From Macrostomum lignano (Eukaryota): DNA of 64,000 nt. Numbering within the stretch: the stretch's first letter is position 1; every line of letters starts with the position of its first letter. The stretch covers positions 113,148 through 177,147 of the forward strand of contig NIVC01002409.1 of assembly GCA_002269645.1 (NCBI GenBank). The letters run 5' to 3'. The notes under the pieces were generated by a model that was not told where the DNA came from, searched no databases, and worked only from the letters and a program-made list of their open reading frames with translations. The translations under genes and the position numbers were made by a program. Below, piece after piece: positions 1,777-63,727 of this stretch.

Positions 1777-2107
1777 AGATATTCCAAAAGTCAGTTTTCG
1801 TTGCCTCATAGATGCCTCAAGGTCTCTTTTAGAAGGCAGGAATTCCCCAAGCTCAGCATTTCTCCTCCATCTGGAAGAACACCCCCACCATCCCCTACGT
1901 CCCCTCCGTCTGGAAGAATTTCCCGATCAATTATTCTCCCTCACGCATGTGAGAAGCCGGACCGCTACTTGCGTTTAAGTGGTCCATTTTATAGAAATTT
2001 AATAAGCAGAAAAAAGCAGCAGCAGCTACTATCAGTTAGTGAGTAGGTAGCTGCGGTTTCATAGTGAACTGTCGGTCACATAGGGTAGGGTAACAATACA
2101 TATAGTG

Positions 2108-6269: not shown

Positions 6270-11530
<5,261 letters not shown>

Positions 11531-27422: not shown

Positions 27423-30400
27423 ATGCCAAGCATGTCAACATTTCAAGCAAATTCATTGCAGACTGTAGCGCAGAGTGCCAAGCATGTAGCACAGAAACCA
27501 TCTGAAAAGACAGAAAGGCTGGTTAAAGATTGGTTAAAGGCCTCGCTACTCGATGAGTGTGATTCTTCCACTCCATTGACCATTAGCAAACCGAAGTCCT
27601 TCGATCATCATGCCACCAAAGGACTGGCTTCGAAAAAAAAGTGTAAGAGCTGGAAAGGTACTAAAAAAATCCAGGTCATCAATTCAAAAAAAGATTTGCT
27701 TAACCAGAATTTTTAAGCAACAATCCAAAAGGATGCAACTGGTGGACTTTAAACGTCAGCGTCAGTGTATAAATAAACAACGAGACTTAACGCGGTTAAT
27801 CCACCCAACTGCTAAATCAGGTCAAAATCAACTAGCACGGGCACGGAGCCATTGTTCTGCATCAACTGTCCAAGCAAAGTTAAGCGCCCTGGATCCCATT
27901 GTAGCCGCTTCTTTCGATCCTGATGGAATACCAACAGTTGACCATGTTGGAAGGACTTCTTTGCACATTGCTATGGGGTCTTTGCACAAGTCAACACTGG
28001 AATTTACAATTGAAGTATTCAAAGAACGAAACATGCTGGCGTGTCGTGATAATGCTAATTTTACTCCGCTGCACATGGCTTGCTCCATTGGAAACTATGA
28101 AGCTGCAAAGCTATTGCTTAGAGCAGGTGCTTCACCAAATGAGTATGGGGGAGATAACAGTACAACTCCTCTTTACGAAGCCGTTTGCAAGGCACATCTA
28201 AATATTGTAAAGCTTCTGGTTGAGTTCGGCACAGACATTGCAGCAAAGGACAAAGCCGGAAAATCTATTGTTGAAATTGAAACTTCCACCGAAGTCCGTG
28301 ATTATATTCGATGTGTGTTGGCTGATAATGCCACTGGTAGTGCTACTGAATCAGGGGCCTACACGCCTATAGTTGGCGAAAAAAGACTACCGACTATTTA
28401 TGTTCTCAACTCAGTTAATTCGATGGATACCAGGCCTTTTATGTTACTTTCGGAGTTGTGCACTTCTTTGAATCTGTCAGAGAATTGCTTCAAACGAATT
28501 TATCAACAGAGCCTCGACTTCGTGACAATGGACAACGAATCAATCGCTAGTCGTATTATCAATCCATTTCTAAGAGACTCGTTTGAAAGATCTTCTGTCA
28601 GTGTCTCTAGCTGCCTTGTTGAAGTGAATTCATTTCTGAGAGATTTGCTTGGAAATACTAGCAAAAATTACGACTCTGGGTCTCAGGATATCGATGCGCC
28701 AGAGAAAGCGCAATCTTACGACTCGGAAGAAACAGTCGAAATGGTCTTCAATAGTTTTCGCAGCGAGCACGAGATTGAAATGCGCTCAGACGACATGAAG
28801 CGTCTTAAATTCTCAATTCAGAACAATGAATCGCATGGAAACTCACATTCAGACATCCCGTCTCAAAATCACCTTGATAGCAGCACTTCAAAAACTATAT
28901 TTCGACACAACCCACTCAGTGGTCAAGTATTGCTACCTGGTTTTATCTCCGCCTCTTGCCACTCATCGACAGGTCATCATATTGATGCCTTGCCTAATGT
29001 TGACCTAGATCTGGACGCTGATGAGGAAATCAGAGTGCCACCTAAAGTCTTGAAATCCTCAAAGCAGAAGTCACATCCATTACTTTCTTCATCTAGCAGC
29101 AGAATACCCGACGTAGTTGGCGCACCTAAGTCACTTGTATCTCTTGTGCCTGCTACTCCGCCTTGTGACTTGCTACTGCCTAACTCGTCTTTAACTCCGG
29201 AAAATGATTCTGCTATGGTTCGACCGTCGGATGATATCTCTGCGTCTCTTGGTATGTAGTTTCTTTTAACTAACGGCTGTTTATAAAAAAGTATTCATAG
29301 CATAAAAATACAACACATTTCTATTTTCTTGTTTCTAGCTCCGCATGTTATAGAAGCTGCAGATTTGTCAAGCAAGCAAGACGCCATTCCATTCGTTTTT
29401 ACACGGGGCCATTCATCATCAGCGTGCTGTGTTCAAGGTCAGTTGTTACTGGCGTATTGTTGCCTCTTCGAACATATTTGGAATATTGTCTAGTTTGGAT
29501 CAGTAAAACTAATTAAAATCCTAAAATCAACTCAGAAGTAAAGGCTCTAGTCTACACACTATAGTGTTCCATAGATGATTAAATGAAAGTATTAAAATAA
29601 ATATGTGCTCCGAAGTTCAGCTTCGTCTTCATATTTTTTAGAAGCAGCGCTTGCACCAGAGTCTATCCCAGGTTATCCTGATGACCAGTGTGTCCGCCAA
29701 TCGGCTTCTTCAATCAGTTCAGGTATGAAAGCATTTTACACAAGTGCTACGTGTATGCTTTAATAAAAGGTGCTTGAGCTGTGGGTAGGTTTCTACCCTC
29801 AGATGGCATTAAACTACTGACGCTGACATACCCACCGCTTCACCGCATGTCCATCCTAAAACTGTGCACAGCCTCGCCAGGCCACTGCAGAGGCTTGTCA
29901 AGATTCTTGCTCGGGATATTCTGCGGAGCCTCATCTTGGAGATGCTGCATAGAGTTGCTGCCATGTTGCTTGTCCAGGGAGGCCATTCTCGTTTAGTATT
30001 CGAGTTTTTAAACGAATAAAACCTATCTTGATTCATTCACCCTCCCATATTTATTTGCTCTCGTATCTGACTAAGGTGTAAGTTGCATCGTTTTCCGAGG
30101 TTGAAATGTAAAGGCTCGTTCGGGAGGGCCGTAGCCTAGTAGTCCAGCGGCCGAGGCTCGATTCCAAGTGCAGCCACATTTATTTGGGGATAATTTGAAT
30201 CTTGGCTTGGCTCTGCCTGGAGGGCCGACCCCCAAGGCACAGTAAAGTGTACATGCCTAACGATAAATATAAAGTTTGGGTCGCTGTACACTCCTGTGTG
30301 AATGTGTGCCTGTGCGTATGAATGCGTCAATGTCGCTTAAAGTGCGTCAGGGTGTACACAGCCCCCTGCCTCCAACAACAAACGACAAAGGCTCGTTATA

Positions 30401-33062: not shown

Positions 33063-33137
33063 GCCAGCCGTTCTTCTCCAGGAAAGCTGCAGATGCCCGA
33101 ATCCAGTCAAGCGCCACCGACTCAACTCCCGGCAAGA

Positions 33138-33907
33138 ATGGCTGCCGCTCACCTCCTGGCCTTCCTGATTCTGCTGGCCGGCTCGGTGCCGCGGCCGGCG
33201 GTGCGGGCCGGACTGGCCCAGCAGTTCCACAGCGTGAACGGCAGCCTGTGCATCGGCAGCGAGTTCACTGAGACCCACAGCACCGGCTCCGAGCGCGAGT
33301 GCGCCATGCTGTGCAGCGACAGCCAGCGCTGCCAGGCCTTCACCACGGCTGACGGTCCGTGCCAGCTGTTCGTGTTCGACAGGTGCAGCAAGTCGGTGCG
33401 GGACTGCGGCTGCTCCCGGAGAGGCCGCCTGTTCGTGAAGCGGCAGCCGGGACTCGAGCCGGGCGCGCTGTGTCCTCCTGGCTACGGAGACGAGCTGTGT
33501 GGAGTGAAGTACCGCACCATCAGCACCATGCCGCATCCTGGTCGGCCAGCAGGCAGCTGTGCGAGTCGGAGCCGGGCCTGGTGATCATGGCTGACGTGAT
33601 GGACTCAACCGAGATGGAGCACGTAGAGAGCCTGTACAACAAGACCTACCCAGGTGGTTCGATGTGGCTGGGAGGCCTCCAGCTGCCGGGCAGCTCGGAG
33701 CCGGCGGACGGCTGGGTCTGGGCGAGCTGCGGCGGCAGCCTCAGCGCCAGCCTGTGGGCCAGCGGGGAGCCAAGCAATGGCGGTGGCAATGGCATAGAGA
33801 ACGTCACATTGAGGTACAAAACAAAAGCCGGCCTTACGGACGTAAGAGACGACTTAACGGGCATCCCAGTCGGTGTGCTGTGCGAGTGCGTGTCGCCTTT
33901 TGATTGA
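33138..33907 (+). CDS. Secreted PAN/apple + C-type lectin protein, copy 1 (-1 frameshift at about 33527)
   Basis: Signal peptide MAAAHLLAFLILLAG; PAN Cys pattern C..ECAMLCSDSQRCQAF..CQL; long-form CTLD start CPPGYGDELC. The lectin continues in another frame (SWSASRQLCES..WLGG..W..GEPS..CECVSPFD). No intron. Confidence 0.82.
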
Positions 33908-35230
33908 CCGAGTGCTCGAACAACTTCAGTAATGTCAATATAATTACACTTTTGAGACTTGAGTGCCTCGGTTAGTTTTGTGCCTTTCCTCCATCCATAA
34001 TGCAGAGTAGACCCACATCACAGACTGTACACTCAAACTGTTCTATCGATTCTAATCCCGATTATGAGAATAAATATACACCTATTGCTAAACAACTGCA
34101 GTACTAAACACATAATGACTTTTACAGTGTACATGCTATACTTTATTTATGTTTAAATCAGTATTCAGGAGCATGCAATTTTTGTCAGCTGAAGATTTTA
34201 ACTCTCCTCTATTGATGTAGAATGGAATTTACATGTACATGCGTTTCCAATATACTACTAGTAAGGAGAATTTTGTAAGTAGTTGAAACGAGGGATACTT
34301 GCGAGGGGGGGGGGGGTTGATTTGATTGCAGTGAAGATTTTATGCTCGAAAACTTTTAGTGTTTGATTTTTCTGCTCTTCTTGCCGTTGATGCACTCCGC
34401 AACATCCAACATTTTTCAACACCGAAACGGTGCAAAAAGTTATCAAGGTTTGCATGGTATGCTTTGGCCTTAGACAAGGAAACTAACTGAAAATTTGTAG
34501 TGGCTGTATTTTTTAAGTTTCTGTCTATCTTCAGTTAGGCTTGGCCTCAATGCTTTTAAACGAATTTTATACCTTTTTTTCACCATGATTATCGAGTTTA
34601 CCGTCTTGAGTGATTGAGTTGCCCTTGCCTGCTAGTAAAGCGGCAGGTACAAGCAGGGCAGGGGCGGGCGCAGGTGATCAGCTGTGCATTTCTTCCCCTG
34701 TAAATTGTATGTTTTTGCATTGCTCTACATTGTTCCACACACAGCTGCACGTATTCGGCTGCAAAATATAGTCTACATGATCTTGTAGACTAGAGCTGAG
34801 AAACTTAAAGCTTGCATCCCGCAGTATTGTTCTGCTTTTGAAAAAGAGCGACAGCAATGTCAATTACCGGTAGTCAGCAATATTACAGCATAAATAAATA
34901 TGGAATGAGGTCTCTTCAAATAGTTTGATAGTGCAAGACTTCCTCAGCAACAAGCACAGGATTCTTCTGTTGCTAGACTCTTAAATGTTAGTCTAGCTAA
35001 TGTGTCACCCTCCATGTATAGCCTGGCCTGAGCTACTTGGTGCACTTCAATATGCTTGGTGCAGCTGATCAAAGGGCGCTGGGAGACAGGCCTCTTGATT
35101 GCCTGCAGGTAGTGCGGTTCGGCCATGCTGAGCGGTGCTGCTGGGTCCTGATCCACGCTTTGATGCGCGAGTCGATAAAGAAACTCTTCACTAGGTAAAA
35201 AACTGCAGTCACAAAAATCGCCTGAAGGTC

Positions 35231-36450
35231 TGAGCAGCTCCCATCTGGAGATTTGTGCAGCTCCCATCTGGAGATTTAAGCAGCTCCCATCTGGAGACTT
35301 GAGCAGCTCCCATCTGGAGACTTGAGCAGCTCCCATCTGGAGACTTGAGCAGCTCCCATCTGGAGATTTAAGCAGCTCCCATCTGGAGATTTGTGCAGCT
35401 CCCATCTGGAGACTTGAGCAGCTCCCATCTGGAGATTTAAGCAGCTCCCATCTGGAGATTTAAGCAGCTCCCATCTGGAGACTTGAGCAGCTCCCATCTG
35501 GAGACTTGAGTAGCTCCCATCTGGAGACTTGAGCAGCTCCCATCTGGAGATTTGAGCAGCTCCCATCTGGAGATTTAAGCAGCTCCCATCTGGAGATTTA
35601 AGCAGCTCCCATCTGGACATTTAAGCAGCTCCCATCTGGACATTTGAGAAGCTCCCATCTGGAGATTTAAGCAGCTCCCATCTGGAGATTTAAGCAGCTC
35701 CCATCTGGAGATTTAAGCAGCTCCCATCTGGACATTTAAGCAGCTCCCATCTGGACATTTGAGAAGCTCCCATCTGGAGATTTAAGCAGCTCCCATCTGG
35801 AGATTTGTGCAGCTCCCATCTGGAGACTTGAGCAGCTCCCATCTGGAGATTTAAGCAGCTCCCATCTGGAGATTTAAGCAGCTCCCATCTGGAGACTTGA
35901 GCAGCTCCCATCTGGAGACTTGAGTAGCTCCCATCTGGAGACTTGAGCAGCTCCCATCTGGAGATTTGAGCAGCTCCCATCTGGAGATTTAAGCAGCTCC
36001 CATCTGGAGATTTAAGCAGCTCCCATCTGGAGATTTAAGCAGCTCCCATTTGGACATTTAAGCAGCTCCCATCTGGACATTTGAGAAGCTCCCATCTGGA
36101 GATTTAAGCAGCTCCCATCTGGAGATTTGAGCAGCTCCCATCTGGAGATTTGAGTAGCTCCCATCTGGAGATTTGAATAGCACCCATCTGGAGATTTGAG
36201 TAGCTCCCATCTGGAGATTTGAATGGCTCACATCTGGAGATTTGAGTAGCTCACATCTGGAGATTTGAGTAGCTCCCATCTGCAGATTTGAGCAGCTCCC
36301 ATCTGCAGATTTGAGCAGCTCCCATCTGGAGATTTGAGCAGCTCCCATCTGGAGATTTGAGCAGCTCCCATCTGGAGATTTGAGTGGCTCCCATCTGGAG
36401 ATTTGAATAGCTCCCATCTGAAGGTCTGAGCAGTTCTCACTTGAAGATCT
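35231..36450. repeat. 23-bp satellite (GAGCAGCTCCCATCTGGAGATTT)n, about 53 units
   Basis: Direct; homologous to about 4 units at 32166-32260. Confidence 0.96.
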
Positions 36451-36997
36451 GAATACGAACAAGCAAGTTAACATGTACTATATTTTAATTGGCAAACCTC
36501 GTCAGCAAGTCTGAATTGAGCCATACGCCAGTGCCCAGACACTGACGGGCCGCTGCGCATACAAGGAATAACGGCGTGCTGCTCAAATTTGCTGCTCAAA
36601 TATGCAGCAAATTACTATACCAAATACTCCCAGAAGAGAGCCTAAAACAGAAATGGTTTTTTCGTTGAAAAGTTTCCTGCGTGGAGAGAATTGGCTAGCA
36701 GCTTTGCCCCATTGAAGCTATTCAGCTGTTTTATAAATTTTGCATAGCAGTGGCTGAGCTGCCAGCGCAGTCAACAACAGCTCGCAGTCATCAGATGCAT
36801 GAAAAGCTGCTTTGTACTTACAATTAATTGGCAAGTGAATCTGTGAGTTGCTTCTTCCACGTCTTTATCGCCTTGACAACCAGTGAAAGAGGCAGTGTCC
36901 ACACAGCCAATCAAGGTATAGCTGCTGAGGATGACGCCGAGGGTATTAAGCACGCTGCTCTTCCCCAAGCGCCACAGCCACAACTCCCAGCAATTGA

Positions 36998-37752
36998 ATG
37001 GCTGCCGCTCACCTCCTGGCCTTCCTGATTCTGCTGGCCGGCTCGGTGCCGCGGCCGGCGGTGCGGGCCGGACTGGCCCAGCAGTTCCACAGCGTGAACG
37101 GCAGCCTGTGCATCGGCAGCGAGTTCACTGAGACCCACAGCGCCGGCTCCGAGCGCGAGTGCGCCATGCTGTGCAGCGACAGCCAGCGCTGCCAGGCCTT
37201 CACCACGGCTGACGGTCCGTGCCAGCTGTTCGTGTTCGACAGGTGCAGCAAGTCGGTGCGGGACTGCGGCTGCTCCCGGAGAGGCCGCCTGTTCGTGAAG
37301 CGGCAGCCGGGACTCGAGCCGGGCGCGCTGTGTCCTGGCTACGGAGACGAGCTGTGCGGAGTGAAGTACCGCACCATCAGCACCATGCCGCATCCTGGTC
37401 GGCCAGCAGGCAGCTGTGCGAGTCGGAGCCGGGCCTGGTGATCATGGCTGACGTGATGGACTCAACCGAGATGGAGCACGTAGAGAGCCTGTACAACAAG
37501 ACCTACCCAGGTGGTTCGATGTGGCTGGGAGGCCTCCAGCTGCCGGGCAGCTCGGAGCCGGCGGACGGCTGGGTCTGGGCGAGCTGCGGCGGCAGCCTGA
37601 GCGCCAGCCTGTGGGCCAGCGGGGAGCCAAGTAATAGCTGGGGTGTCGAGAACGTCACCGTCAGGTACCAACCAAAAGTCGGCATCACAGACTTTCCCGA
37701 CACGGGGGTGGTAGTTGGTGCTCTCTGCGAGTGCGTGTCGCCTTTTGAGTGA
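36998..37752 (+). CDS. Secreted PAN/apple + C-type lectin protein, copy 2 (same -1 frameshift at about 37384)
   Basis: Nearly identical to copy 1 up to GEPS (3-nt deletion CPPG to CPG), then a divergent lectin tip SNSWGVENVTVRYQPKVGITDFPDTG. Confidence 0.82.
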
Positions 37753-41796: not shown

Positions 41797-42767
41797 ATTG
41801 ACTAACGATTTCACTGTTATCTTTTAGTTAAACCATAGACAGCTGTGTTGTCTCACTCCTGTGGGGTAGGAATTGAACCAAACCCAGTTCGATTTAAGCA
41901 ACGAAGCGAGCGCGTCCAAAATGCAGCCCAAATTAATCGGCTGCTAAACTTAAGCTACTTTCCAAACGAGTGAGTGAGCGAGTTGGATTTCGTCTAGAGC
42001 AAAATTGCAAAATTACGGGTCACAAGCAGACCAGGACAGTTCAGAGGTTAGTAAAACGGACGACATGCATAAATTTTTTTCTCTGCTACCTTTATGCCTT
42101 TCTTCGCTGCCCAAGAGCCGGACCCAAAAGTGGTCGTGCCTGTCACCAAGCTCGGACCTGTTTCGTCCCGTCAGCACCTTATGAATCAGGTGATCGACGT
42201 GGATTCCACAAACGTAGAAGGCGTTTTCGCGTTTCAGCGTTTTCGCTTGACGTCAATGGAACTTTTGCTAACTGCGTGTTCAATTTCAAGCCTTAGGATG
42301 CAACCTGACATCGTCAATGCTACCTAAACTGGAAAAAAACTACTAAGTTTTGCCGACATTTGTTTTAATAGTTGACATTGATTACTGGATCAGTTTCCAG
42401 TTGAACTTAAATAATCCAAATATACTAAATCTCTAAGGTTTGTATGCTTGCTTGCTTGTCCATAATAAGTATTCTAAAAATAGAAGCGTGCTTGTCTCAA
42501 AAGCTGAGAACTGGACAACCATTGCAGCGCTGTCTATGGCCGAGCTGGGTGCCCTCATCACATTCTTCAACCTTACGGTAAGGCTACAGTATGGCCATCA
42601 TACTAGAGCCGCTGCTTCTATCGAGTCTGTCGCCATGACAACCAAGGGAAAGAGGGATTGTCCACAGAGCCAATCAAGGGAGATGGGGGCGAGAGTATTA
42701 AGCCAGCTGCTCTTCCCCCAAGAAGCCGGAACCCAGGCAAGCGCCACAGCCTCAACTCCCAGCAAGA

Positions 42768-43800
42768 ATGGCTGCCGCTCACCTGCTGGCCTTCCTGATT
42801 CTGCTGGCCGGCTCGGTGCCGCGGCCGGCGGTGCGGGCCGGACTGGCCCAGCAGTTCCACAGCGTGAACGGCAGCCTGTGCATCGGCAGCGAGTTCACTG
42901 AGACCCACAGCGCCGGCTCCGAGCGCGAGTGCGCCATGCTGTGCAGCGACAGCCAGCGCTGCCAGGCCTTCACCACGGCTGACGGTCCGTGCCAGCTGTT
43001 CGTGTTCGACAGGTGCAGCAAGTCGGTGCGGGACTGCGGCTGCTCCCGGAGAGGCCGCCTGTTCGTGAAGCGGCAGCCGGGACTCGAGCCGGGCGCGCTG
43101 TGCCCGCCTGGCTACGGAGACGAGCGCTGCGGAGTGAAGTACCGCCTGATCAACAGCACCGCCACCTGGTCAGCCCAGAAGCTCAGGTGCGAGGCGGGAA
43201 TTCTGCTATCGGGGTTTCTGCGATCCGCTTCACATTCCCCGGGTTTGGCCCCATTTGTTCGGGGTTGTCACGTATAGCTGACCTGAATTTTGCGCAATTT
43301 TCACTCACTAATAAAAGCCAACCCCAAGGCGTAGAGTGAGCACACTGCCGGAGGATGAAAGTCAGGGTAGATTAAGACTCGGTGGGTGTTTCCGTGTCCG
43401 AATGATCCATGCATAATCGGAAATGGTAGCAGAAACGGCTCACGGGCCCTCCGCAACTGACTGAACTGACAGGTGCGAGTCGGATTCCGGCCTGGCGATG
43501 CTGGCCGATGTCACTGACTCGTCTGAGATGAGCCACGTGGACGCCATGTACACCGCGCTCAGCCCGGGAGTCGCTGTCTACCTGGGCGGCTACCGCGTGT
43601 CTCCTGGGGCCGCTCAGACCGACGGCTGGCTCTGGGCGGCCTGCAACATCACGGTGGACAAGACGCTCTGGGCCTCTGGCGAGCCCAATGTGTTTGAGGA
43701 GAAGGCAACGCTCCGGTACCAGACAGTGCCGAAGCTGGTGGACATCACGGATTCGGGAGCCTACGGTGCGATCTGCGAGTGTGTGTCGCCTTTTGACTGA
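42768..43800 (+). CDS. Secreted PAN/apple + C-type lectin protein, copy 3 (intact, 2 exons)
   Basis: Exons 42768-43186 and 43473-43800; splicing AG|GT..AG|G gives in-frame ..TWSAQKLRCESDSGLAMLADV..YLGG..W..GEPNVFEE..ICECVSPFD. Confidence 0.86.
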
Positions 43801-45139: not shown

Positions 45140-46010
45140 TTAGCGGGCCTCAGTGGGCTTTTGAGCGGGCCATTAGCGGGCCGAAGCGAATCGGCCCGTA
45201 TTACAGGCCTTTTACAACAAATTGGCCCGCTGAAACTCGGCCTGCTCTGAAGCCCGCTGATTAGCCCGCTAATGGCCCGCTCGAAACCGATCCGCAGATC
45301 GGCCCGCTGATTAGCCCGCTGGTTGGCCCGCTCACTGGCCCGTTCTAAACCGGCCCGCTGCGCGGCCCACTGGTTGGCCCGCTGGTTGGCCCGTTCTAAA
45401 CCGGCCCGCTGGTTGGCCCGTTGGTTGGCCCGCTCAATGGCCCGTTCTAAACCGGCCAGCTGCTCGGCCCACTAGTTGGCCCGCTCACTGGCCCGCTGGT
45501 TGGCCCGTTCTAAACCGGCCCGCTGGTTGGCCCGTTGGTTGGCCCGCTCAATGGCCCGTTCTAAACCGGCCAGCTGCTCGGCCCACTAGTTGGCCCGCTC
45601 ACTGGCCCGCTGGTTGGCCCGTTCTAAACCGGCCCGCTGGTTGGCCCGCTGGTTGGCCCGCTCAATGGTCCGTTCTAAACCGGCCAGCTGCTCGGCCCAC
45701 TAGTTGGCCCGCTCACTGGCCCGTTCTAAACCGGCCCGCTGGTTGGCCCGCTGGTTGGCCCGCTCAATGGTCCGTTCTAAACCGGCCCGCTGCACGGCCC
45801 GCTGGTTGGCCCGCTCACTGGCCCGATCTAAACCGGCCCGCTGCTCGGCCCACTAGTTGGCCCGCTGGTTGGCCCGCTGGTTGGCCCGTTCTAAACCGGC
45901 CCGCTGGTTGGCCCGCTGGTTGGCCCGCTGGTTGGCCCGTTCTAAACCGGCCCGCTGGTTGGCCCGCTGGTTGGCCCGCTCAATGGTCCGTTCTAAACCG
46001 GCCCGCTGAC
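45140..46010. repeat. Left subterminal repeat array (GGTTGGCCCGCT / GGCCCGTTCTAAACC motifs)
   Basis: Direct; inverse of the right array. Confidence 0.95.
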
Positions 46011-46541
46011 TTGTTGTGAACGTGATAATCTTATCAAATGGTGTATAAACTTGTACGTGTAAACTTTTGCGGTGTCTTGGCGCTCGGGCAATTATTTGAT
46101 TTGTAGAGCACTAATGCTGTCCAATAAACTGTGCATACACAAATTTCATGATGACATGTACAATGAGTGTGTCAATTTTATTTATTTTTATCGCCTTATA
46201 CGCCCACAGCAATTTGTATATCGCGCTACGTTGTGACGTATGTACTTCAGATATCACCCAGTTTAGTGTGAAACCATTGCTTCGCCCTTTGTTGGCTCTT
46301 GGGCTAAGATAGCAAACTGATTTAAACTGATAGTAGAATGATGGTATTTGTTAATTAACAATTTTAGTACGGATTCTCTCCTAGTCACACAGGTATTCAA
46401 TTTCTTCATTTTCAGTCACTTGAACGACTAAAAGAGCTCGACAAGAAGTCAGTTGCCATCGCACGGCGCTTCAGTCGACTCAAAGAATCACTCAGACAGA
46501 CAGTTGCGGCGACAGCCCGTCCGACACGAGCAGAAGCTTCA

Positions 46542-49196
46542 GTGAGCCATTTACTAACTGCAACTCGGACCACTCATGACGTACCAACCACTCATGACGC
46601 GCAAACAAGCAACAGTGTAGCCAGTGTTGGCAGCAGCTGGCAGCCAGCATTGGCAACAGGTGGATGTAGCAGTGGCGTCCAGACTCCCATGGTCGTCGAG
46701 CCTACCGGCTCGCAGTATTCAGACAACGACGATGAGGACGTATCTTCTAGATCTATCGTTGAGGAACCAGGCGAAGAAGCTCCAGATGACGACTATTGGA
46801 GTGGCGCTCCAATGGCGTTGGACGCCATCGAGCAGTGCGACGATTGTGAGGACTTCACTGAAGATGACCGCCCACCAGAGGATGAGGATGTACCGTGTGT
46901 TGGCAATGGAGCCACCCATAACCCAGAAGCTATGGATATGCAGCCGCGTAGGAGAAATGGAGCCGCACTTTTCCTAGACTCTCCGTTGACCTACGATTCG
47001 TTTGCGGCCTATGTGCATTTGTTCAGCGAGCGCCAGTCTCTGCCAAGGAAAGGCATAGCTGACCTGCTTCGCCTCTTCCATGCAGCTGTGCCAGTCGGTA
47101 GCAACCTGCCTGGTAGTGTATATTTACTACGGAAAACAGTCCAGGCATTCGCGAACGACTTTACATCGCCACCCCGACTGTTCTGTTCCTCCTGTAGTGC
47201 TGAGGTCACGTCAGCACAGGCTCAGAACCGTGAAAATTGCACTTATTGTAACAAGGAACTGTCGCCGGCCGGCGTATCCAAGTTTTATACCACCGACTTT
47301 AAATTGCAAATCAGACAGTTAATTGAACAGTGCCGGCTTCTACAGAGCGTAACTTTCCCTGTCGATTTGTCATCTGAAGATCGTAATTTTGTCTCAGTAT
47401 CCAGTTGCGACGAGTATCGGCATTTCAAGCGTTCAGTTCGGCTACACTTGAAGCAAGATCTGTCGTATACTGTGAACATCGACGGCTTTCCAGTATTTGC
47501 AGACGCGCTGATGGAAATGTGCCCAGTGTACTTGAGTATCAACGAAGTACACGAAGCAATGAAATCGCGTTTCATCGTCGTATGTGGTTTCTGGGCTGCA
47601 AAGTCGAAAGTCAAGACATCCACCTTCCTTCCCGGCCTTGTTAGAGAGCTGAATGAGCTCCGGTCTATCGGGATCACCTACAGCACAGGTGGTGGCACTG
47701 AAGGCGACGCGCCTGGTCTTCTTCGACTGCACCCGTACCTATTCGTCTTGGATGCCCCACAGAGAGCTGAGGTTGTCGGTCTAAAGCGTCACAATGCAGA
47801 GTTCGGCTGCGACAACTGCTATGTGAAGACGCAGAGATCATTGGGTGCCAATCGGTACCCAGTCAGTGGCAAAGAAGAGGCGGTTGCGCTGGCAACCGCA
47901 GTCGGTTGTATTACACCGCACGCTCGTAGCTTGCGAGACACGCGCCTACTGGCGCACAACATCCCGGTCGGCAAGGACAACTATCTGGGCGTTATGTGCG
48001 TGTCAGTGTTGGACCAGTTAAACGGTTTCGACTACATGCATGGGTGTCCACCGTGTCTGCTTCATCAGTGCTATCTTGGACTCGTTCACTGGATTTTGAA
48101 ACAGCTGTTTCATCCTAAGAAACCAGACATGTACCACGCGCATAACCCCAATCTAGTTTCGCGACGTGCAGATGTGGACCTTGCCTCTTCGCGGATTCAC
48201 GTACCCCTGTCTCATCAACGTGCTCCCCGAAGTTTCCATGAACTCGGCATGTTTCGGGGCCACGAACTTGAGGCATGGTTAATCGTCTACGGCCCTATGG
48301 TGATGGAAGGCATCCTGCCCGACCGCTACTACTGGCACCTTCAGCTACTGTCCACGGCCATGTTCTGGCTTACATTGGATGGAGCGCCTCTAATGGAAGT
48401 GATGAAAGCCAGCCGGCTTCTGCACTACTTTTACAGTCAGCTGCCTCAGATGTACTCCAACATGGCCCTTACGTACAATGCACACCAAGTTTGTGAGCAC
48501 TTTGTATCGTACGTAACTTTATACGGGCCAATGTGGAGGATGTCTGCGGGCTTGTTTGAGTCGTCGCATGCGAATCTTCGCACCAAAATTCACGGCTCCA
48601 GGAATGTTGACACCGAAGTTGCCGGCCTCCTACAGCGCCAATTGGCGCGAAGGCAAATGATGGCCGAATTGCAACTCCCCAACATCTTCAGCGAGGGACC
48701 ACCAAATGGTGAGGTTCGACTGCCGGATGGTGTGCGACTGCGCAATCCTATTCGCCGCCAATTGGCGGGCGGTGACACACGGTATGGCAAAGCAGTACTG
48801 ACCAGCGGGCTACGCATTGAAATATTCTTGCCTCGCCTGATCCACCAGCGCGCCGCCTCGTGCTTTGTTACTGTCCTCATCCCTAACTGTCGTCAGCCGT
48901 TTGAATTCGCACGAATTGAGGAAATTCAACTCCGGGACAATTGCGCATGGGTTCGCCTACGCCGCCTTCTGACTGTGGAGCCGCACGAGGACAATCATCC
49001 GTTGTACCGCTTGACTGGCGAACCGGACCACGGCGGATGCTCAGTCGCACACGTTCGGCGCCTGCGTGCCAATCCATTTTGCGCAGTTGACAAATACTAC
49101 TTCGAAATCCCTGCTAACGACGTACTCGCTACGTGTTGTGTGAACGACCGCTACGTAGCATTCCTCCCCCATATTCAGTTTTCTTACGCAGCGTGA
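46542..49196 (+). CDS. CACTA/EnSpm-family DDE transposase (TnpD-like)
   Basis: Uninterrupted 884-codon ORF, also open upstream to an acceptor at 46415. Motifs YTVNIDG (D), LDAPQRA (D), GCDNC, CLLH..LG, R.PRS, ELEAWL..YGP, H..YV..YGP, FES (E), plus an N-terminal CxxC..CxxC pair. Confidence 0.9.
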   Translation: MSHLLTATRTTHDVPTTHDAQTSNSVASVGSSWQPALATGGCSSGVQTPMVVEPTGSQYSDNDDEDVSSRSIVEEPGEEAPDDDYWSGAPMALDAIEQCDDCEDFTEDDRPPEDEDVPCVGNGATHNPEAMDMQPRRRNGAALFLDSPLTYDSFAAYVHLFSERQSLPRKGIADLLRLFHAAVPVGSNLPGSVYLLRKTVQAFANDFTSPPRLFCSSCSAEVTSAQAQNRENCTYCNKELSPAGVSKFYTTDFKLQIRQLIEQCRLLQSVTFPVDLSSEDRNFVSVSSCDEYRHFKRSVRLHLKQDLSYTVNIDGFPVFADALMEMCPVYLSINEVHEAMKSRFIVVCGFWAAKSKVKTSTFLPGLVRELNELRSIGITYSTGGGTEGDAPGLLRLHPYLFVLDAPQRAEVVGLKRHNAEFGCDNCYVKTQRSLGANRYPVSGKEEAVALATAVGCITPHARSLRDTRLLAHNIPVGKDNYLGVMCVSVLDQLNGFDYMHGCPPCLLHQCYLGLVHWILKQLFHPKKPDMYHAHNPNLVSRRADVDLASSRIHVPLSHQRAPRSFHELGMFRGHELEAWLIVYGPMVMEGILPDRYYWHLQLLSTAMFWLTLDGAPLMEVMKASRLLHYFYSQLPQMYSNMALTYNAHQVCEHFVSYVTLYGPMWRMSAGLFESSHANLRTKIHGSRNVDTEVAGLLQRQLARRQMMAELQLPNIFSEGPPNGEVRLPDGVRLRNPIRRQLAGGDTRYGKAVLTSGLRIEIFLPRLIHQRAASCFVTVLIPNCRQPFEFARIEEIQLRDNCAWVRLRRLLTVEPHEDNHPLYRLTGEPDHGGCSVAHVRRLRANPFCAVDKYYFEIPANDVLATCCVNDRYVAFLPHIQFSYAA

Positions 49197-49709
49197 GAAT
49201 TGTATGTACTCATTGTACGTAGGGTGTCCCAATAAGAAGGAAAAATCGTTGCACAGGCTTTCTGGTAAAACAATATAATTTCTTAGAACTCACATCACTA
49301 TAGTAAGTAAACATTCGAAAGTTCTAAAGCTTTTTAAATTGAGTAGAAATGTCACCTGTTCATTCAAAACTTATGACTACAGTTTACAACAAGGGGTGAG
49401 GGCTAGAGGACACCCTCGCTCAAACGGGACGGGATATGCCATAATTGCTCTTTTCCAGCATGCCTTCTTCAACTGTGTTTTGCTTTTATTGCTTTTATAT
49501 ATAATATATATATTGCTTATACTGCTTACTACTGCACATTGCTATGTGGTATCATAGGAAATTATATTTATATTTAGTAACAAACGTCGGTCACATGACG
49601 TCTATATCCATATGTTGCCTTCCTTTACGCCTTTATTTCTACCTGACAATATAGTAGGTTACAACCGGTACGCAGCTGTCCTTTTGTTCCAATAATCACG
49701 GTTTGTCCG

Positions 49710-50081
49710 TTGGCCCTGACAAAATTGGAAGCCGCAGCAGTTGAAATGCGAAAAGCCGCAAACAATAACAAGATTCACAGACGAGCCATTCGGCTAGTCA
49801 TACTTGCTGTGTGCCCTGAGCAAGACCTGCGAACCGCATCTTGGGCTGGTCGACAGGTGAAAGGAGAGAAAGCGGCCAACCGGGTTGAGCTGGATAGCTC
49901 TAAGAAGGCGGCCATACGGTCCTACCTGGCCAGTAAACTGGTCTCAGAGGAGGACAAAAAACTATTCACAGACGCCGAACTCGGCGAGGTCTTTTGCCGT
50001 ACAGCCAGGACCGTACGGGATCGGGAGAGTTCGTCTGCGAAAAGTGGCGCCTGCGCAGAAAATGAAGAGGAAAGCGAGTAG
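49710..50081 (+). CDS. Second transposon ORF/exon with a BEN-domain-like sequence
   Basis: AIRLVILAVCPEQDLRTASWAGRQVK..RVELDSSKKAAIRSYL..EVFCRTARTVRDR resembles the BEN pattern (R.L...F.EE.L...S..G....R..LD..K..AIR.Y). Recognised by eye only; start and splicing unresolved. Confidence 0.55.
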   Translation: MALTKLEAAAVEMRKAANNNKIHRRAIRLVILAVCPEQDLRTASWAGRQVKGEKAANRVELDSSKKAAIRSYLASKLVSEEDKKLFTDAELGEVFCRTARTVRDRESSSAKSGACAENEEESE

Positions 50082-50399
50082 TAGAGACTAGGCCTCGATT
50101 GTGGTGACAATTTTTCACTATGCTGACAAACATTACTTTGGGTTGAGAATAGACTCTGAGGCTAGGGTTGCTCTTTTATATATTAGCTCTTTTAGCTCTA
50201 TTAGCTATATTAGCTCTTTTAGCTATTCGTGCCACCATGAAAAAATACTAGTATTCAATTTTAACCTTAACATCACTTTGTTTTTACCAGATCCGATGAT
50301 GTATATTCCCGGTTTTTATAAAAAAGCTAATTGTACGGCTCATCGGTCTGACTTAGAAATCTCATGCTTATTTTGCTTCTTTACTTATTTTTTTTGTTC

Positions 50400-51580
50400 G
50401 TTCAGCGGGCCAACCAGAGGGCCGGTTTAGAACGGGCCAACCAGCGGGCCAACCAACAGGACAGCCAGCGGGCCGGTTTAGAACGGGCCAATGAGCGGGC
50501 CGGTTTAGAACGGGCCAATGAGCGGGCTGGTTTAGAACGGGCCAATGAGCGGGCCAGCCAGCAGGCCGGTTTACAACGGGTCAATGAGTGGGCCAGTGAG
50601 CGGGCCAACCAGCGGGCCAACCAACGGGCCAACCAGCGGGCCGGTTTAGAACGGGCCAACCAGCGGGCCAACCAACGGGCCAGCCAGCGGGCTGGTTTAG
50701 AACGGGCCAATGAGCGGGCCAGCCAGCAGGCCGGTTTACAACGGGTCAATGAGTGGGCCAATGAGCGGGCCAACCAACGGGCCAACCAGCGGGCCGGTTA
50801 AGAACGGGCCAATCAGCGGGCCAACCAACGGGCCAACCAGCGGGCCGGTTTAGAACGGGCCAATCAGCGGGCCAGCCAGCAGGCCGGTTTAGAACGGGTC
50901 AATGAGTGGGCCAGTGAGCGGGCCAACCAACGGGCCAGCCAGCGGGCCAAACAACGGGCCAGCCAGCGGGCCGGTTTAGAACGGGCCAGTGAGCGGGCCA
51001 GCCAGCGGGCCAACCAACGGGCCAACCAGCGGGCCGGTTTAGAACGGGCCAACCAGCGGGCCAACCAACGGGCCAGCCAGCGGGCCGGTTTAGAACGGGC
51101 CAATGAGCGGGCCGGTTTAGAACGGGCCAATGAGCGGGCTGGTTTAGAACGGGCCAATGAGCGGGCCAGCCAGCAGGCCGGTTTACAACGGGTCAATGAG
51201 TGGGCCAATGAGCGGGCCAACCAACGTGCCAACCAGCGGGCCGGTTAAGAACGGGCCAATCAGCGGGCCAACCAACGGGCCAACCAGCGGGCCGGTTTAG
51301 AACGGGCCAATGAGGGGGCCAATCAGCGGGCCAGCCAGCAGGCCGGTTTAGAACGGGTCAATGAGTGGGCCAGTGAGCGGGCCAACCAACGGGCCAGCCA
51401 GCGGGCCAAACAACGGGCCAGCCAGCGGGCCGGTTTAGAACGGGCCAGTGAGCGGGCCAGCCAGCGGGCCCAGAAGCGGGCCGTGGAACGGGCCGATTTG
51501 AGAGACTCGTTGATTTGGAAAAATGAGCGGGCTTTTAGAGCGGGCTTTTCTGACACGAAGTGGCCGATGAGCGGGCCAAT
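50400..51580. repeat. Right subterminal repeat array (AGCGGGCCAACC / GGTTTAGAACGGGCC motifs)
   Basis: Direct; explains the ERANQRAG ORFs. Confidence 0.95.
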
Positions 51581-51966: not shown

Positions 51967-53125
51967 TCTCACTGAGTGACCAGACCAATAACCAATCGTC
52001 ACTGAGTAACCAGACCAGTAACCAATTGTCACTGAGTGACCAGACCAATAACCAATCGTCACTGAGTGACCAGACCAGTAACCAATTGTCACTGAGTGAC
52101 CAGACCAGTAACCAATTGTCACTGAGTAACCAGACCAGTAACCAATTGTCACTGAGTGACCAGACCAGTAACCAATTGTCACTGAGTAACCAGACCAGTA
52201 ACCAATTGTCACTGGGTGACCAGACCAGTAACCAATTGTCACTGGGTGACCAGACCAGTAACCAATTGTCACTGGGTGACCAGACCAGTAACCAATTGTC
52301 ACTGAGTAACCAGACCAGTAACCAATCGTCACTGAGTGACCAGACCAGTAACCAATTGTCACTGAGTGACCAGACCAGTAACCAATTGTCACTGAGTAAC
52401 CAGACCAGTAACCAATTGTCACTGGGTGACCAGACCAGTAACCAATTGTCACTGGGTGACCAGACCAGTAACCAATTGTCACTGGGTGACCAGACCAGTA
52501 ACCAATTGTCACTGGGTGACCAGACCAGTAACCAATTGTCACTGAGTGACCAGACCAGTAACCAATTGTGACTGGGTGACCAGACCAGTAACCAATTGTC
52601 ACTGAGTGACCAGACCAGTAACCAATTGTCACTGAGTGACCAGACCAGTAACCAATTGTCACTGAGTGACCAGACCAGTAACCAATTGTCACTGAGTGAC
52701 CAGACCAGTAACCAATTGTCACTGAGTGACCAGACCAGTAACCAATTGTCACTGAGTGACCAGACCAGTAACCAATTGTCACTGAGTGACCAGACCAGTA
52801 ACCAATTGTCACTGAGTGACGAGACCAGTAACCAATTGTCACTGAGTAACCAGACCAGTAACCAATTGTCACTGAGTAACCAGACCAGTAACCAATTGTC
52901 ACTGGGTGACCAGACCAGTAACCAATTGTCACTGAGTGACCAGACCAGTAACCAATTGTCACTGAGTAACCAGACCAGTAACCAATTGTCACTGAGTAAC
53001 CAGACCAGTAACCAATTGTCACTGAGTAACCAGACCAGTAACCAATTGTCACTGAGTGACCAGACCAGTAACCAATTGTCACTGGGTGACCAGACCAGTA
53101 ACCAATTGTCACTGAGTGACCAGAC
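51967..53125. repeat. 30-bp satellite (GTCACTGAGTGACCAGACCAGTAACCAATT)n, about 38 units
   Basis: Direct. Confidence 0.97.
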
Positions 53126-53989
53126 TAAATTTAAACAAAATTATCTGCTTTATAGCTCCCATTTCTTCGACGCTCACCGCAGACGCTTGCTACTAAAACT
53201 GTGCATGTGTCATGAAGACTCAAACAAGAAACGAACGGTGATGCAGAACGCAGAAAACCTAATATTAACGACATTTCTTCACTCGCCATGCAAGCTTTTC
53301 GCGTCAAAATCTCTACTTTCTACTTACATGCATCAGTAGACAAATTAGACCGATTGGCCACCGATCAACGATCGCTCCTCCCGTAAGACCCAATTAAATC
53401 AACAATTAAGCAGGCACTGCTATCAGCCAGTTTTGTTTTAAATAGGCAATTAATAATTTATTAGACGCAAATGTTCGGAGTGAGCAGGCCAGAGGCCAGC
53501 AGCAGTTACAAGCGCGAGTTGTTTTTGTTAATGTTAGCGCGAGTCCACTTCATCCTCAGAGCAAGGCACTGATGGGCCAAAGCGAAGATTCTGGATGGCA
53601 GCAAGATGTTTCTTGAATGTTGGCAGATTGAGTGAGTTTCCCTTTGAATTTAAATTTTTCCTGCAATATGCGCATCAGCTACTGAATAAAGAATAGCTTA
53701 TGGCCGGCAGTTCTTGCTGATATCCCGAAATCTTTGTATCAAACTAAGGAAACAAAACAATGTGATATTTAATAATAAATAAATAAATATCAGTAAATAA
53801 CGAGCTAGTGTGATGAGCGAGTGTGAAGAACCCCCCCCCCCAATAGAACTATTCGAACCGAAAGAATGAACTTGAACTTCGAATCGAGTCCCACAGGGGC
53901 TTATAGCGGCATTTGATCCCCATTCAGAGTTTATGCAGTAATGAAACAGGAAATAAAATCAGTTTGTGGCTCAGCGGGTGATGAGGGGG

Positions 53990-63397: not shown

Positions 63398-63727
63398 CTG
63401 GACGATAGGGGTGAGCGGTTGCGAAACAGATCGATTGAATTTACATGCATCTACAGGTTCAAAATAGCTGCCTAGGTGCCTAGAGATCACGAAGAGTCGT
63501 GAATCTTTGGGATAATAGAAGAAACATTTAAGATCATCCTTAGCGATATCTACTGACAATAAATACAGATTTACAGATAGACAGAGACCCACAGGTCATA
63601 TGCAAAGATTTAAAGATCATAGACAGATATACAGATCACAGATAGATCTATAGTTCTGGATATTTCACACATTATGGACAGATCTATAGATCATAGACAC
63701 ATATCTACACACCATATAAACAGATCT

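What the first reader, a model, noticed from the sequence alone, without database searches (positions are those of the whole stretch)
43184..43479. Apparent recent intron gain: a 286-nt intron unique to copy 3, bounded by a 10-bp direct repeat containing AG|GT
Seen: CAGGTGCGAG occurs at 43184-43193 and again at 43470-43479. Splicing from the GT in the first copy (43187) to the AG in the second (43472), which is preceded by branch-like CTGAC/CTGAAC words, restores the frame exactly. Copies 1 and 2 have no intron here (CAG CTG TGC GAG TCG). Established: duplication of an AG/GT proto-splice site by an insertion or staggered-break repair is a proposed route to intron gain (introners, Daphnia-type gains). 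Inference: a new intron whose splice sites come from its own target-site duplication. No true TIRs are visible, only an offset TTCTGCTA/TAGCAGAA pair, so the source is unclear.
Basis: partly seen in the sequence, partly recalled or inferred. Interest (0 to 1): 0.75.

Follow-up and report, generated by a model that had tools for sequence, protein, structure and literature searches.

The report
Possible new intron in flatworm lectin gene
A 276-base piece of unique DNA has been inserted into one copy of a flatworm (Macrostomum) lectin gene, and its duplicated 10-base target supplies a GT and an AG that could splice it out exactly; this is a credible but unproven example of a rare event, an animal gene gaining an intron.

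Summary
CAGGTGCGAG occurs only at 43184-43193 and 43470-43479 (0.13 expected per window). It flanks 276 nt that are absent from both paralogues in the window and from two more distant homologues.

Removing 43187-43472 (GT...AG, 286 nt, phase 2) is the only GT-AG choice that restores the full 248-aa secreted PAN + C-type-lectin protein. Its closest relatives are Macrostomum lignano lectins that read AQKLRCESDSGL straight across the junction.

So this is a derived insertion with a 10-bp (perhaps 14-bp) target duplication. The duplication contains one of only two AGGT sites in the gene, a 2-3% chance for a random hit.

Splicing cannot be tested here. The donor GTGCG departs at +4 from the species motif GT[G/A]AG; the acceptor CAG fits.

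I found no second copy of the insert, no terminal inverted repeats, no RNA family, and no coding or bacterial source. An introner family is therefore not supported. The pattern best matches Daphnia-type new introns made by repair of staggered breaks.

Caveats: copies 1 and 2 are old paralogues (43% identity in that half), both frameshifted about 30 nt upstream. Copy 3's 5' half is a gene-conversion tract.

Estimate: spliced new intron about 55%, plain disrupting insertion about 35%.

The parts
42670..42703 (+). Conserved promoter-like motifs of copy 3: CCAATCAAGG (42670-42679) and GTATTAAGC (42695-42703), about 70-100 nt upstream of the ATG
   Evidence: Both motifs are identical in all three copies. 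Their role as a promoter is inferred, not tested.
42768..43186 (+). Exon 1 of copy 3 (419 nt, ends in phase 2): signal-peptide-like N-terminus, PAN/apple-like domain and the start of the C-type lectin domain
   Evidence: Translation. The PAN match to EtMIC5 (1hky) has E=3.9e-4; the Pfam PAN_4 match is weak, below its cut-off. The family profile matches C-type lectin structures from profile position about 114 onwards.
42735..43120 (+). Tract about 100% identical to copies 1 and 2 (gene-conversion tract); it ends 60-80 nt upstream of the insertion
   Evidence: Identity in 30-nt windows of alignment A1 is 30/30 from 42793 to 43092, then falls to 50-70%. dS is 0.02 in the first 118 codons and 0.85 afterwards.
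43184..43193 (+). Left copy of the duplicated target CAGGTGCGAG; supplies the exon end CAG and the donor GTGCGAG (possibly extends to 43197)
43187..43472 (+). Putative phase-2 GT-AG intron, 286 nt (one repeat copy plus the insert)
   Evidence: Its removal restores the 248-aa ORF and the alignment with relatives across KLR|CES. GC is 52%, against 64-69% in the exons. Splicing itself was not tested.
43194..43469 (+). Inserted DNA proper, 276 nt, source unknown
   Evidence: - Absent from copies 1 and 2, L001 and L002.
- No second copy in the window.
- No Rfam or tRNA match.
- Folding is no more stable than shuffles, z = 0.39 and 1.39.
- No protein, plasmid, phage, metagenome or prokaryote match.
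43195..43224 (+). Imperfect 15-nt tandem repeat at the very start of the insert: CGGGAATTCTGCTAT / CGGGGTTTCTGCGAT (12 of 15 match)
   Evidence: 0 of 300 shuffles of the insert reach it.
43439..43461 (+). Candidate branch sites: CTCAC (A at 43442, 30 nt from the acceptor) and CTGAC (A at 43460, 12 nt). The last 30 intron bases are only 53% pyrimidine.
43470..43479 (+). Right copy of the duplicated target; supplies the acceptor CAG (43470-43472) and the first exon-2 bases GTGCGAG (possibly extends to 43483)
43473..43800 (+). Exon 2 of copy 3: the rest of the C-type lectin domain and the stop TGA at 43798-43800
   Evidence: The frame is open, and copy 3 keeps every residue that is invariant across the family alignment.
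33138..33907 (+). Copy 1 of the gene. No insertion at the site. Frameshift within ACCATGCCGCATCC (33525-33538), so the ORF from the ATG ends at 33584.
36998..37752 (+). Copy 2 of the gene. No insertion at the site. Same frameshift (37382-37395), so the ORF from the ATG ends at 37441.

Best explanation
**Shown**
- Copy 3 is a single-exon-type gene for a secreted PAN + C-type-lectin protein of a Macrostomum flatworm.
- It received a 276-nt insertion of unique, non-coding DNA within codon 140, just before the first conserved cysteine of the lectin domain.
- The insertion was made with a staggered cut that duplicated 10 bp (perhaps 14 bp) of target, CAGGTGCGAG.
- The duplicated target holds AG|GT. 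The left copy therefore offers a donor (CAG|GTGCGA) and the right copy an acceptor (ACAG|G). Using them removes the insert plus one repeat copy and leaves the mRNA exactly as it was before the insertion.

**Inferred**
- The spliceosome does use these sites, so the insertion persists as a new phase-2 intron rather than as a null allele.
- The insert contributes only the branch site and spacing.
- The most likely origin is repair of a staggered double-strand break with captured filler DNA (the Daphnia-type route), or a single-copy fragment of a mobile element, rather than a proliferating introner family.
For: - **Repeat and geometry.**
- **The insertion is derived.** It is absent from copies 1 and 2 in the same window and from homologous contigs L001 and L002. 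In all of these the coding sequence runs straight through the site.
- **Against an old intron.** The intron's first 7 bases (10 of 11 with the extension) repeat the first bases of exon 2. About 4^-5 would be expected by chance beyond the GT.
- **AGGT capture.** Only 2 AGGT sites exist in the 744-nt coding sequence. A random 10-14-bp target would include one in 1.9-3.0% of positions. Capture of an AGGT is therefore about 30-fold more likely if the insertion survived, or was targeted, because it is spliceable.
- **Splice signals.** The exon end CAG, +3 G, +5 G and the acceptor CAG agree with the M. lignano motifs GT[G/A]AG and CAG (PMC8629364). A yTnAy word lies 30 nt from the acceptor. The length of 286 nt is unremarkable for this genome (PMC5730564).
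- **Exon 2 is intact.** It keeps every family-invariant residue. M. lignano proteins about 91% identical in this half read AQKLRCESDSGLAMLADV across the junction.
- **Precedent.** Daphnia new introns carry 4-12-bp direct repeats of the adjacent exon end at the opposite intron end, and 61% carry internal direct repeats (PMC4202315). Here the repeat is 10 bp, and there is a significant internal 15-nt tandem.
Against: - There is no RNA evidence at all.
- The donor has C at +4, outside the GT[G/A]AG motif found at about 65% of M. lignano donors.
- The pyrimidine tract is weak, 53%.
- Copies 1 and 2 carry a frameshift about 30 nt upstream. As their first ORF, all three copies encode a PAN-only product cut at nearly the same place. 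Only the PAN-coding 5' part is homogenised by conversion. This fits a cluster whose lectin half is dispensable and decaying.
- An intact exon 2 is uninformative if the insertion is young.
- An AATAAA lies inside the insert (43310-43315).
- L001 and L002 may be transcript-derived contigs, in which case they say nothing about introns.
Confidence: 0.55

Rival explanations
1. It is a plain disrupting insertion in a redundant, decaying tandem paralogue. The 276 nt went in by the same mechanism, but they are not removed from the mRNA, or only inefficiently. Copy 3 then encodes a truncated PAN-only protein (169-aa ORF 42768-43277) or nothing useful. The AG|GT in the duplicated target is a coincidence.
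For: - Copies 1 and 2 are already frameshifted about 30 nt upstream.
- The three first ORFs all end just after the PAN domain, at 33584, 37441 and 43277.
- Conversion homogenises only the 5' part.
- The donor is off-motif at +4 and the pyrimidine tract is weak.
Against: - The chance that a random 10-14-bp target contains AGGT is only 2-3%.
- The context is better than a bare AGGT: CAG on the exon side, G at +3 and +5, a CAG acceptor and branch-like words.
- Exon 2 has no stop, no frameshift and no change at invariant residues.
- The lectin frame also stays open in copies 1 and 2. There dN/dS is 0.34 and the indels are multiples of three in the region where the two copies differ. The lectin half was therefore under constraint until recently.
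Confidence: 0.35
2. It is an ancestral intron that was lost from the other family members, by precise microhomology-mediated genomic deletion between the flanking repeats or by recombination with cDNA. Copy 3 would keep the old state.
For: - Short direct repeats at intron ends are the substrate proposed for precise genomic intron deletion (PMC3020277, listed).
- The gene structures of the closest relatives are unknown.
Against: - It would need independent losses in at least the copy 1/2 lineage and in the lineages of L001 and L002.
- None of those sequences keeps CAGGTGCGAG or even AGGT at the site. They read CAGCTGTGCGAG, CGCAAGTGCCAA and GCCAAGTGCGAC.
- A 10-nt match (13 of 14) between the intron start and the exon-2 start is far longer than splice consensus gives.
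- Every homologue whose DNA could be read has a coding sequence with no intron at all.
Confidence: 0.04
3. On the source of the insert (this is compatible with splicing): it is a copy of a mobile element, either an introner-like non-autonomous transposon or a 5'-truncated LINE/SINE inserted by target-primed reverse transcription. Other copies would then exist elsewhere in the genome, some of them also acting as introns.
For: - A target duplication of 10-14 bp without terminal inverted repeats is typical of retroposed inserts (my own knowledge).
- The insert's 3' end carries CTGA three times, at 43457, 43461 and 43466. This could be a microsatellite-like LINE tail, but that is only a lead.
- Introner families that take both splice sites from the insertion site are documented, for example in Florenciella (PMC9860276).
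- A large transposon-like unit lies 2 kb downstream.
Against: - No second copy in 64 kb.
- No hit of its six-frame translation in 5.8 billion proteins at E<=10.
- No poly(A) tail, no tRNA-like head and no Rfam match.
- No terminal inverted repeats.
- No similarity to the neighbouring transposon-like unit.
- No flatworm is named in the main text of the two introner surveys read.
Confidence: 0.3
4. It is an assembly artefact: a chimeric or mis-joined read consensus placed foreign sequence between two copies of a short repeat.
For: - The M. lignano genome is very repetitive and partly duplicated, and is known to be hard to assemble (PMC5730564).
- The shared frameshift in copies 1 and 2 could itself be a consensus error: ATGGCC read as ATGCC.
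Against: - A clean 10-bp duplication with an otherwise perfect restoration of the gene is the signature of a biological insertion, not of a mis-join.
- The flanks are collinear with the paralogues on both sides.
Confidence: 0.03

Closest known systems
Daphnia pulex new introns formed by repair of staggered double-strand breaks (Li et al. 2009; PMC4202315)
   Same: - An insertion of unique sequence into an exon.
[quoted passage not shown]
- A source that usually cannot be traced.
- Internal direct repeats in the new intron, here a 15-nt tandem at 43195-43224.
- Exact restoration of the mRNA.
   Different: - The Daphnia cases are proven by presence/absence polymorphism and transcripts. This is a single locus with no population or RNA data.
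- The host is a flatworm.
- The repeat may be 14 bp, beyond the reported range.
Introners that co-opt splice sites from the target duplication or insertion site (Micromonas, Aureococcus, Symbiodinium, Florenciella; PMC9860276, PMC12130899)
   Same: A target duplication provides splice-site nucleotides. In some families both sites come from the insertion site, and splicing leaves the mRNA length unchanged.
   Different: - Introners are defined as families of many near-identical introns. No second copy was found here.
- Reported duplications are 3-9 bp.
- No terminal inverted repeats are present.
- No flatworm is named in the main text of the surveys read.
Intron creation by tandem duplication of an AGGT-containing exon segment (Rogers model; my own knowledge)
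   Same: Both splice sites derive from duplication of one AGGT, and splicing restores the original message.
   Different: In that model the whole intron is duplicated exon sequence. Here only 10-14 nt are duplicated, and the 276 nt between them have no similarity to the gene.
Ordinary retroposon or filler-DNA insertion that disrupts an exon
   Same: A variable-length target duplication of 10-14 bp, no terminal inverted repeats, and an insert GC content (52%) below that of the gene (64-69%).
   Different: The duplicated target carries a well-formed AG|GT in a gene with only two such sites, and no repeat family or tail is recognisable.

Membership tests
U2-type GT-AG spliceosomal intron | GT at the 5' end and AG at the 3' end | tested here: met
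   GT at 43187-88 and AG at 43471-72.
U2-type GT-AG spliceosomal intron | Removal restores an open frame that is collinear with homologous proteins | tested here: met
   The 248-aa ORF aligns without a gap across KLR|CES with P0001, P0002 and P0006. It is the only GT-AG pair that gives the full length.
U2-type GT-AG spliceosomal intron | Splice sites fit the species' motifs (M. lignano donor GT[G/A]AG, acceptor CAG) | tested here: inconclusive
   The donor is GTGCG: +3 and +5 fit, +4 is C rather than A. The acceptor CAG fits.
U2-type GT-AG spliceosomal intron | Branch site and pyrimidine tract upstream of the acceptor | tested here: inconclusive
   yTnAy words have their A at -30 and -12. The last 30 nt are only 53% pyrimidine.
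U2-type GT-AG spliceosomal intron | Actually removed from the transcript | not testable with these tools
   No RNA-seq is accessible. The exact spliced and unspliced products are not in the protein collection.
Introner / introner-like element family | Many near-identical copies serving as introns in unrelated genes | tested here: inconclusive
   No other copy in the 64-kb window, and no translated match in 5.8 billion proteins. The host genome itself could not be searched.
Introner / introner-like element family | Target-site duplication that contributes splice-site bases | tested here: met
   A 10-bp duplication holds both the GT and the AG.
Introner / MITE-type DNA transposon | Terminal inverted repeats | tested here: not met
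   The best terminal alignment is 12 of 25. The only 8-nt inverted repeat is subterminal and was reached in 152 of 500 shuffles.
Daphnia-type new intron (staggered-break repair) | [quoted passage not shown] | tested here: met
   10 bp exact, or 13 of 14 with the extension. The reported range is 4-12 bp.
Daphnia-type new intron (staggered-break repair) | Intron absent from orthologues or alleles (presence/absence) | tested here: inconclusive
   Absent from the two window paralogues and from L001 and L002. No DNA is available for the true orthologues or alleles.
Daphnia-type new intron (staggered-break repair) | Insert is unique sequence, often with internal direct repeats | tested here: met
   No other copy was found. 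The 15-nt tandem at 43195-43224 was reached in 0 of 300 shuffles.
Intron by tandem exon duplication (Rogers model) | Intron body is a duplicate of flanking exon sequence | tested here: not met
   BLASTN with word size 7 finds no similarity between the insert and the gene beyond the 10-14-nt repeat.
SINE / LINE retroposon | Poly(A) or simple-repeat 3' tail; tRNA-, 7SL- or 5S-like head for SINEs | tested here: not met
   No A-rich end on either strand, and no tRNA or Rfam match in the insert. CTGA three times at the 3' end is only a lead.
PAN/apple + C-type lectin domain protein (the host gene) | Recognisable PAN and C-type lectin domains | tested here: met
   - The family profile matches codakine 2vuv (E=7e-6), mosGCTL-1 (5e-5) and selectins over profile positions about 114-253.
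- The single copy-3 sequence matches the PAN domain of EtMIC5 (E=3.9e-4).
- Pfam hits are below the curated cut-offs.
- UniRef names the relatives C-type lectin domain-containing proteins.

The most novel reading that the evidence does not exclude
The insert is one copy of a still-unrecognised mobile element of Macrostomum. It lands with a 10-bp staggered cut at AGGT-containing targets and so makes ready-to-splice introns, taking both splice sites from its own target duplication. That would be a flatworm introner, and an active source of intron gain in a bilaterian animal.
Probability: 0.1. Interest if true: 0.75.

Novelty: new member of a known kind. Interest (0 to 1): 0.45.

Why it matters
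Intron gains caught close to their origin are rare in animals. Most convincing cases come from Daphnia, and from introner families in protists and fungi. If it is spliced, this insertion shows the simplest route from insertion to intron in one locus. A staggered cut through an AGGT duplicates both splice sites, so any filler DNA becomes removable without changing the protein. M. lignano is a laboratory model with transgenesis, RNA-seq and several sequenced relatives, so the claim can be tested quickly. If other copies exist, the source mechanism could be studied experimentally. If it is not spliced, this is an ordinary pseudogenising insertion in a tandem lectin cluster.

Tried and rejected
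- **Other copies of the insert.**
  - BLASTN at word size 7 against the window found only chance 11-14-mers.
  - A concatenated six-frame translation searched against 5.8 billion proteins found nothing at E<=10.
  - Exact 28-mers in JGI metagenomes and in prokaryote genomes gave no match.
  - Distant BLASTN against plasmids and phages gave no match, so the insert is not vector or bacterial DNA.
- **Structured or known RNA in the insert.** Rfam at gathering and at E<=10 found nothing inside it. ARAGORN found nothing. Folding z-scores were 0.39 and 1.39. One C-box-like AGGATGA plus CTGA words were seen, but with no convincing terminal stem; I dropped this as chance.
- **Terminal inverted repeats.** Rejected by shuffles.
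- **Exon-duplication origin.** Rejected.
- **Genomic DNA of the closest relatives.** P0001, P0002 and P0003 are not on record as genes. A metagenome scan with the family profile found no relative. Literature searches for the two Logan run accessions found nothing, so whether L001 and L002 are DNA or RNA stays unknown.
- **Exact look-up of window proteins.** None is in the collection, so the assembly and species could not be pinned down. The M. lignano spliced-leader sequence is not in the window.
- **dN/dS as a test of life after insertion.** It is uninformative. Family values are 0.3-0.6, and the only close relatives are proteins without DNA.
- **Literature.** There is no paper on introners or intron gain in Macrostomum.

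Full report
**What is in the sequence.**
- The 10-mer CAGGTGCGAG occurs exactly twice in the 64-kb window, at 43184-43193 and 43470-43479. The expected count is 0.13, and none of 100 shuffles gave two matches.
- The match extends to 14 nt with one mismatch, CAGGTGCGAGgCGG versus CAGGTGCGAGtCGG.
- Joining 43186 to 43473 removes 286 nt that begin with GT and end with AG. This yields a 248-codon ORF from ATG 42768 to TGA 43798-43800. Unspliced, the frame stops at 43275-43277.
- The intron would be in phase 2, inside codon 140 (AG|G, Arg).
- Among 29 GT-AG pairs nearby that leave an open frame, only 43187/43472 gives the full-length product.

**The gene and its organism.**
- The spliced product has a signal-peptide-like N-terminus.
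- It has a PAN/apple-like domain: the match to EtMIC5 (1hky) has E=3.9e-4, and the Pfam PAN hits are below cut-off.
- It has a C-type lectin domain: the family profile matches codakine (7e-6), mosGCTL-1 (5e-5) and selectins over profile positions about 114-253.
- The only relatives among 5.8 billion proteins are four UniRef C-type lectin domain-containing proteins of Macrostomum lignano and two unnamed Logan contig products.
- A0A1I8J208, A0A1I8HHC9 and A0A1I8HBZ5 are about 91% identical to copy 3 from residue about 65 onward. They read ...TWSAQKLRCESDSGLAMLADVT... without interruption across the junction.
- None of the window's ORFs is in the collection by exact match. The window therefore comes from M. 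lignano or a very close relative, in an assembly the tools do not hold.

**The paralogues.**
- Copy 1 (33138-33907) and copy 2 (36998-37752) lack the 276 nt. They read ...GGCAGCTGTGCGAGTCGG....
- They are not close comparators. From about 42735 to 43120 copy 3 is practically identical to them (dS 0.02). Beyond that, identity drops to 50-70% of nucleotides and 43% of amino acids (dS about 0.85).
- The M. lignano proteins that match copy 3's 3' half have a different N-terminus. Copy 3 is therefore best read as a conversion chimera whose 5' 390 nt were overwritten from a copy-1/2-type donor. The tract ends 60-80 nt upstream of the insertion.
- Copies 1 and 2 share a frameshift within ACCATGCCGCATCC (33525-33538 and 37382-37395). 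It is +2 nt or, more simply, -1 nt (ATGGCC to ATGCC). The ORF from their ATG ends at 33584 and 37441, and the lectin domain lies in another frame, which remains open.

**The insertion is derived.**
- Besides copies 1 and 2, two more distant homologues (44-48% identity) can be read as DNA: L001 (Logan SRR31628392) and L002 (Logan SRR24204725). Both have a coding sequence with no interruption anywhere. At the site they read CGCAAGTGCCAA and GCCAAGTGCGAC.
- L002 carries 261 nt upstream of the ATG, with a TATA-like AATAAAAG at about the same distance as the GTATTAAGC of the window copies. It is therefore probably genomic, but I could not verify whether these runs are DNA or RNA.
- Independent of the homologues, the first seven intron bases (GTGCGAG), and 10 of the first 11, repeat the first bases of exon 2. 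An old intron would show this only by a chance of roughly 4^-5.
- An ancestral intron lost elsewhere would also need several independent precise losses. None of the intron-less sequences keeps AGGT at the site. I put that rival at about 4%.

**What the insert is not.**
- The insert has 52% GC, against 64-69% in the exons.
- It has no second copy in the window.
- It has no terminal inverted repeat. The best 8-nt inverted repeat is subterminal and was matched in 152 of 500 shuffles.
- It has no tRNA or Rfam match, and its folding is no more stable than shuffles.
- Its six-frame translation has no match at E<=10 in 5.8 billion proteins.
- It has no match in plasmids or phages (distant BLASTN), and single exact 28-mers from it have none in JGI metagenomes or prokaryote genomes.
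- It is not duplicated exon sequence, which excludes the tandem-duplication route.
- Its one internal feature above chance is an imperfect 15-nt tandem at its very first bases: 43195-43224, 12 of 15 matching, reached in 0 of 300 shuffles.

**Is it an intron?**
This cannot be tested here, so I weigh the sequence.

In favour:
- The coding sequence has only two AGGT sites. A random 10-14-bp target would contain one at 1.9-3.0% of positions. That is a likelihood ratio of about 30 for "kept or targeted because spliceable" over "random hit".
- The context is better than a bare AGGT. It has CAG at the exon end, G at +3 and +5, and a CAG acceptor. M. lignano's enriched motifs are GT[G/A]AG at donors and CAG at acceptors (PMC8629364). 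A CTCAC has its A 30 nt from the acceptor.
- Exon 2 is intact and keeps all family-invariant residues.
- A 286-nt intron is unremarkable in a genome averaging about 5 introns per gene with a mean length of about 1.1-1.4 kb (PMC5730564).

Against:
- C at +4 is off-motif, and the pyrimidine tract is weak at 53%.
- An AATAAA lies inside the insert.
- The cluster looks partly dead. All three copies, read from their ATG, give PAN-only products that end within about 40 codons of one another, and only the PAN-coding part is homogenised. However, the lectin frame of copies 1 and 2 stays open, with dN/dS 0.34 and indels in multiples of three where the two copies differ. Any decay must therefore be recent.

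I settle at about 55% for a spliced new intron and about 35% for a plain disrupting insertion.

**Mechanism and closest known cases.**
- The anatomy fits the "single staggered break plus insertion" class of Daphnia pulex new introns. In that class a 4-12-bp direct repeat of the exon end appears at the other end of the intron, the source is usually untraceable, and 61% carry internal direct repeats (PMC4202315).
- It also works like those introners that take their splice sites from the target duplication or insertion site (PMC9860276).
- Membership of an introner family fails for now on the defining feature, multiple copies. That test was weak, because the genome could not be searched.
- A retroposed fragment (a 5'-truncated LINE or SINE) is compatible with a 10-14-bp duplication without inverted repeats. 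No tail or head motif supports it, however. CTGA three times at the 3' end is only a lead.
- No flatworm is named in the main text of the two introner surveys I read, and no paper links Macrostomum to intron gain.

**Verdict.**
- The insertion with its target duplication is real and derived.
- Intron status is plausible and quickly testable, but unproven.
- "Recent" is not established.
- An introner family is not supported.
- This is a new member of a known kind of event, of moderate interest.

Noticed in passing
window 33525-33538 and 37382-37395: Copies 1 and 2 of the lectin gene share a frameshift in ACCATGCCGCATCC (+2 nt, or a lost G in ATGGCC). Their ATG-initiated ORFs end at 33584 and 37441, while the lectin-domain frame stays open. 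This is either a recent pseudogenising mutation spread by conversion or a consensus error of the assembly.
   Followed up: partly
window 42735-43120 versus 33105-33490 and 36965-37350: There is a gene-conversion tract. About 390 nt of copy 3 (end of the 5' UTR plus codons 1 to about 118) are practically identical to copies 1 and 2. The rest of the gene is 50-70% identical. The closest M. lignano proteins have a different N-terminus, so copy 3 is a chimera.
   Followed up: partly
window 45218-51545: An 884-aa ORF (46542-49196, + strand) has no Pfam or PDB match. It is flanked by inverted arrays of roughly 50-110-nt tandem repeats at 45218-46011 and 50402-51545. It looks like a large DNA transposon with subterminal repeat arrays. 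From memory, the C-terminal half resembles TNP2/KDZ-type transposases, but this is untested.
   Followed up: partly
window 43195-43224: An imperfect 15-nt tandem (CGGGAATTCTGCTAT / CGGGGTTTCTGCGAT) sits at the first bases of the insert and is above chance (0 of 300 shuffles). It could be a footprint of iterative repair synthesis, or a terminal repeat of an unknown element.
   Followed up: partly
window 43010-43013: The only other AGGT in copy 3's coding sequence (GACAG|GTGCAGC) resembles the duplicated target (CAGGTGC is shared) and is present in all three copies. Together with the new acceptor at 43472 it could act as a cryptic out-of-frame donor.
   Followed up: no
window 1-21600, 35222-36455, 51969-53128 and elsewhere: The window is unusually rich in satellite-like tandem arrays, for example 2086-4524, 9125-10085, 12560-14036, 19259-20753, 35222-36455 and 51969-53128. 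The two ARAGORN tRNA calls (9212-9302, 9381-9471) lie inside one such array and are probably false.
   Followed up: no
window 27610-29259 and 8146-9117: Other apparent genes: a 549-aa ankyrin-repeat ORF with much lower GC (43%) than the lectin genes, and a fasciclin-domain ORF that runs into a tandem array.
   Followed up: no
window 59680-63440, minus strand: Several high-GC3 ORF pieces on the minus strand (59682-60386, 60777-61085, 62808-63440) look like exons of a coiled-coil protein gene separated by introns that contain satellites. They could serve as local reference introns.
   Followed up: no
L001 725-925: Downstream of the homologous lectin gene, contig L001 carries a stretch that translates to a LINE reverse-transcriptase-like peptide (VLLHGCKTWTL...). 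This hints that the contig is genomic or that the 3' UTR holds a transposon fragment.
   Followed up: no
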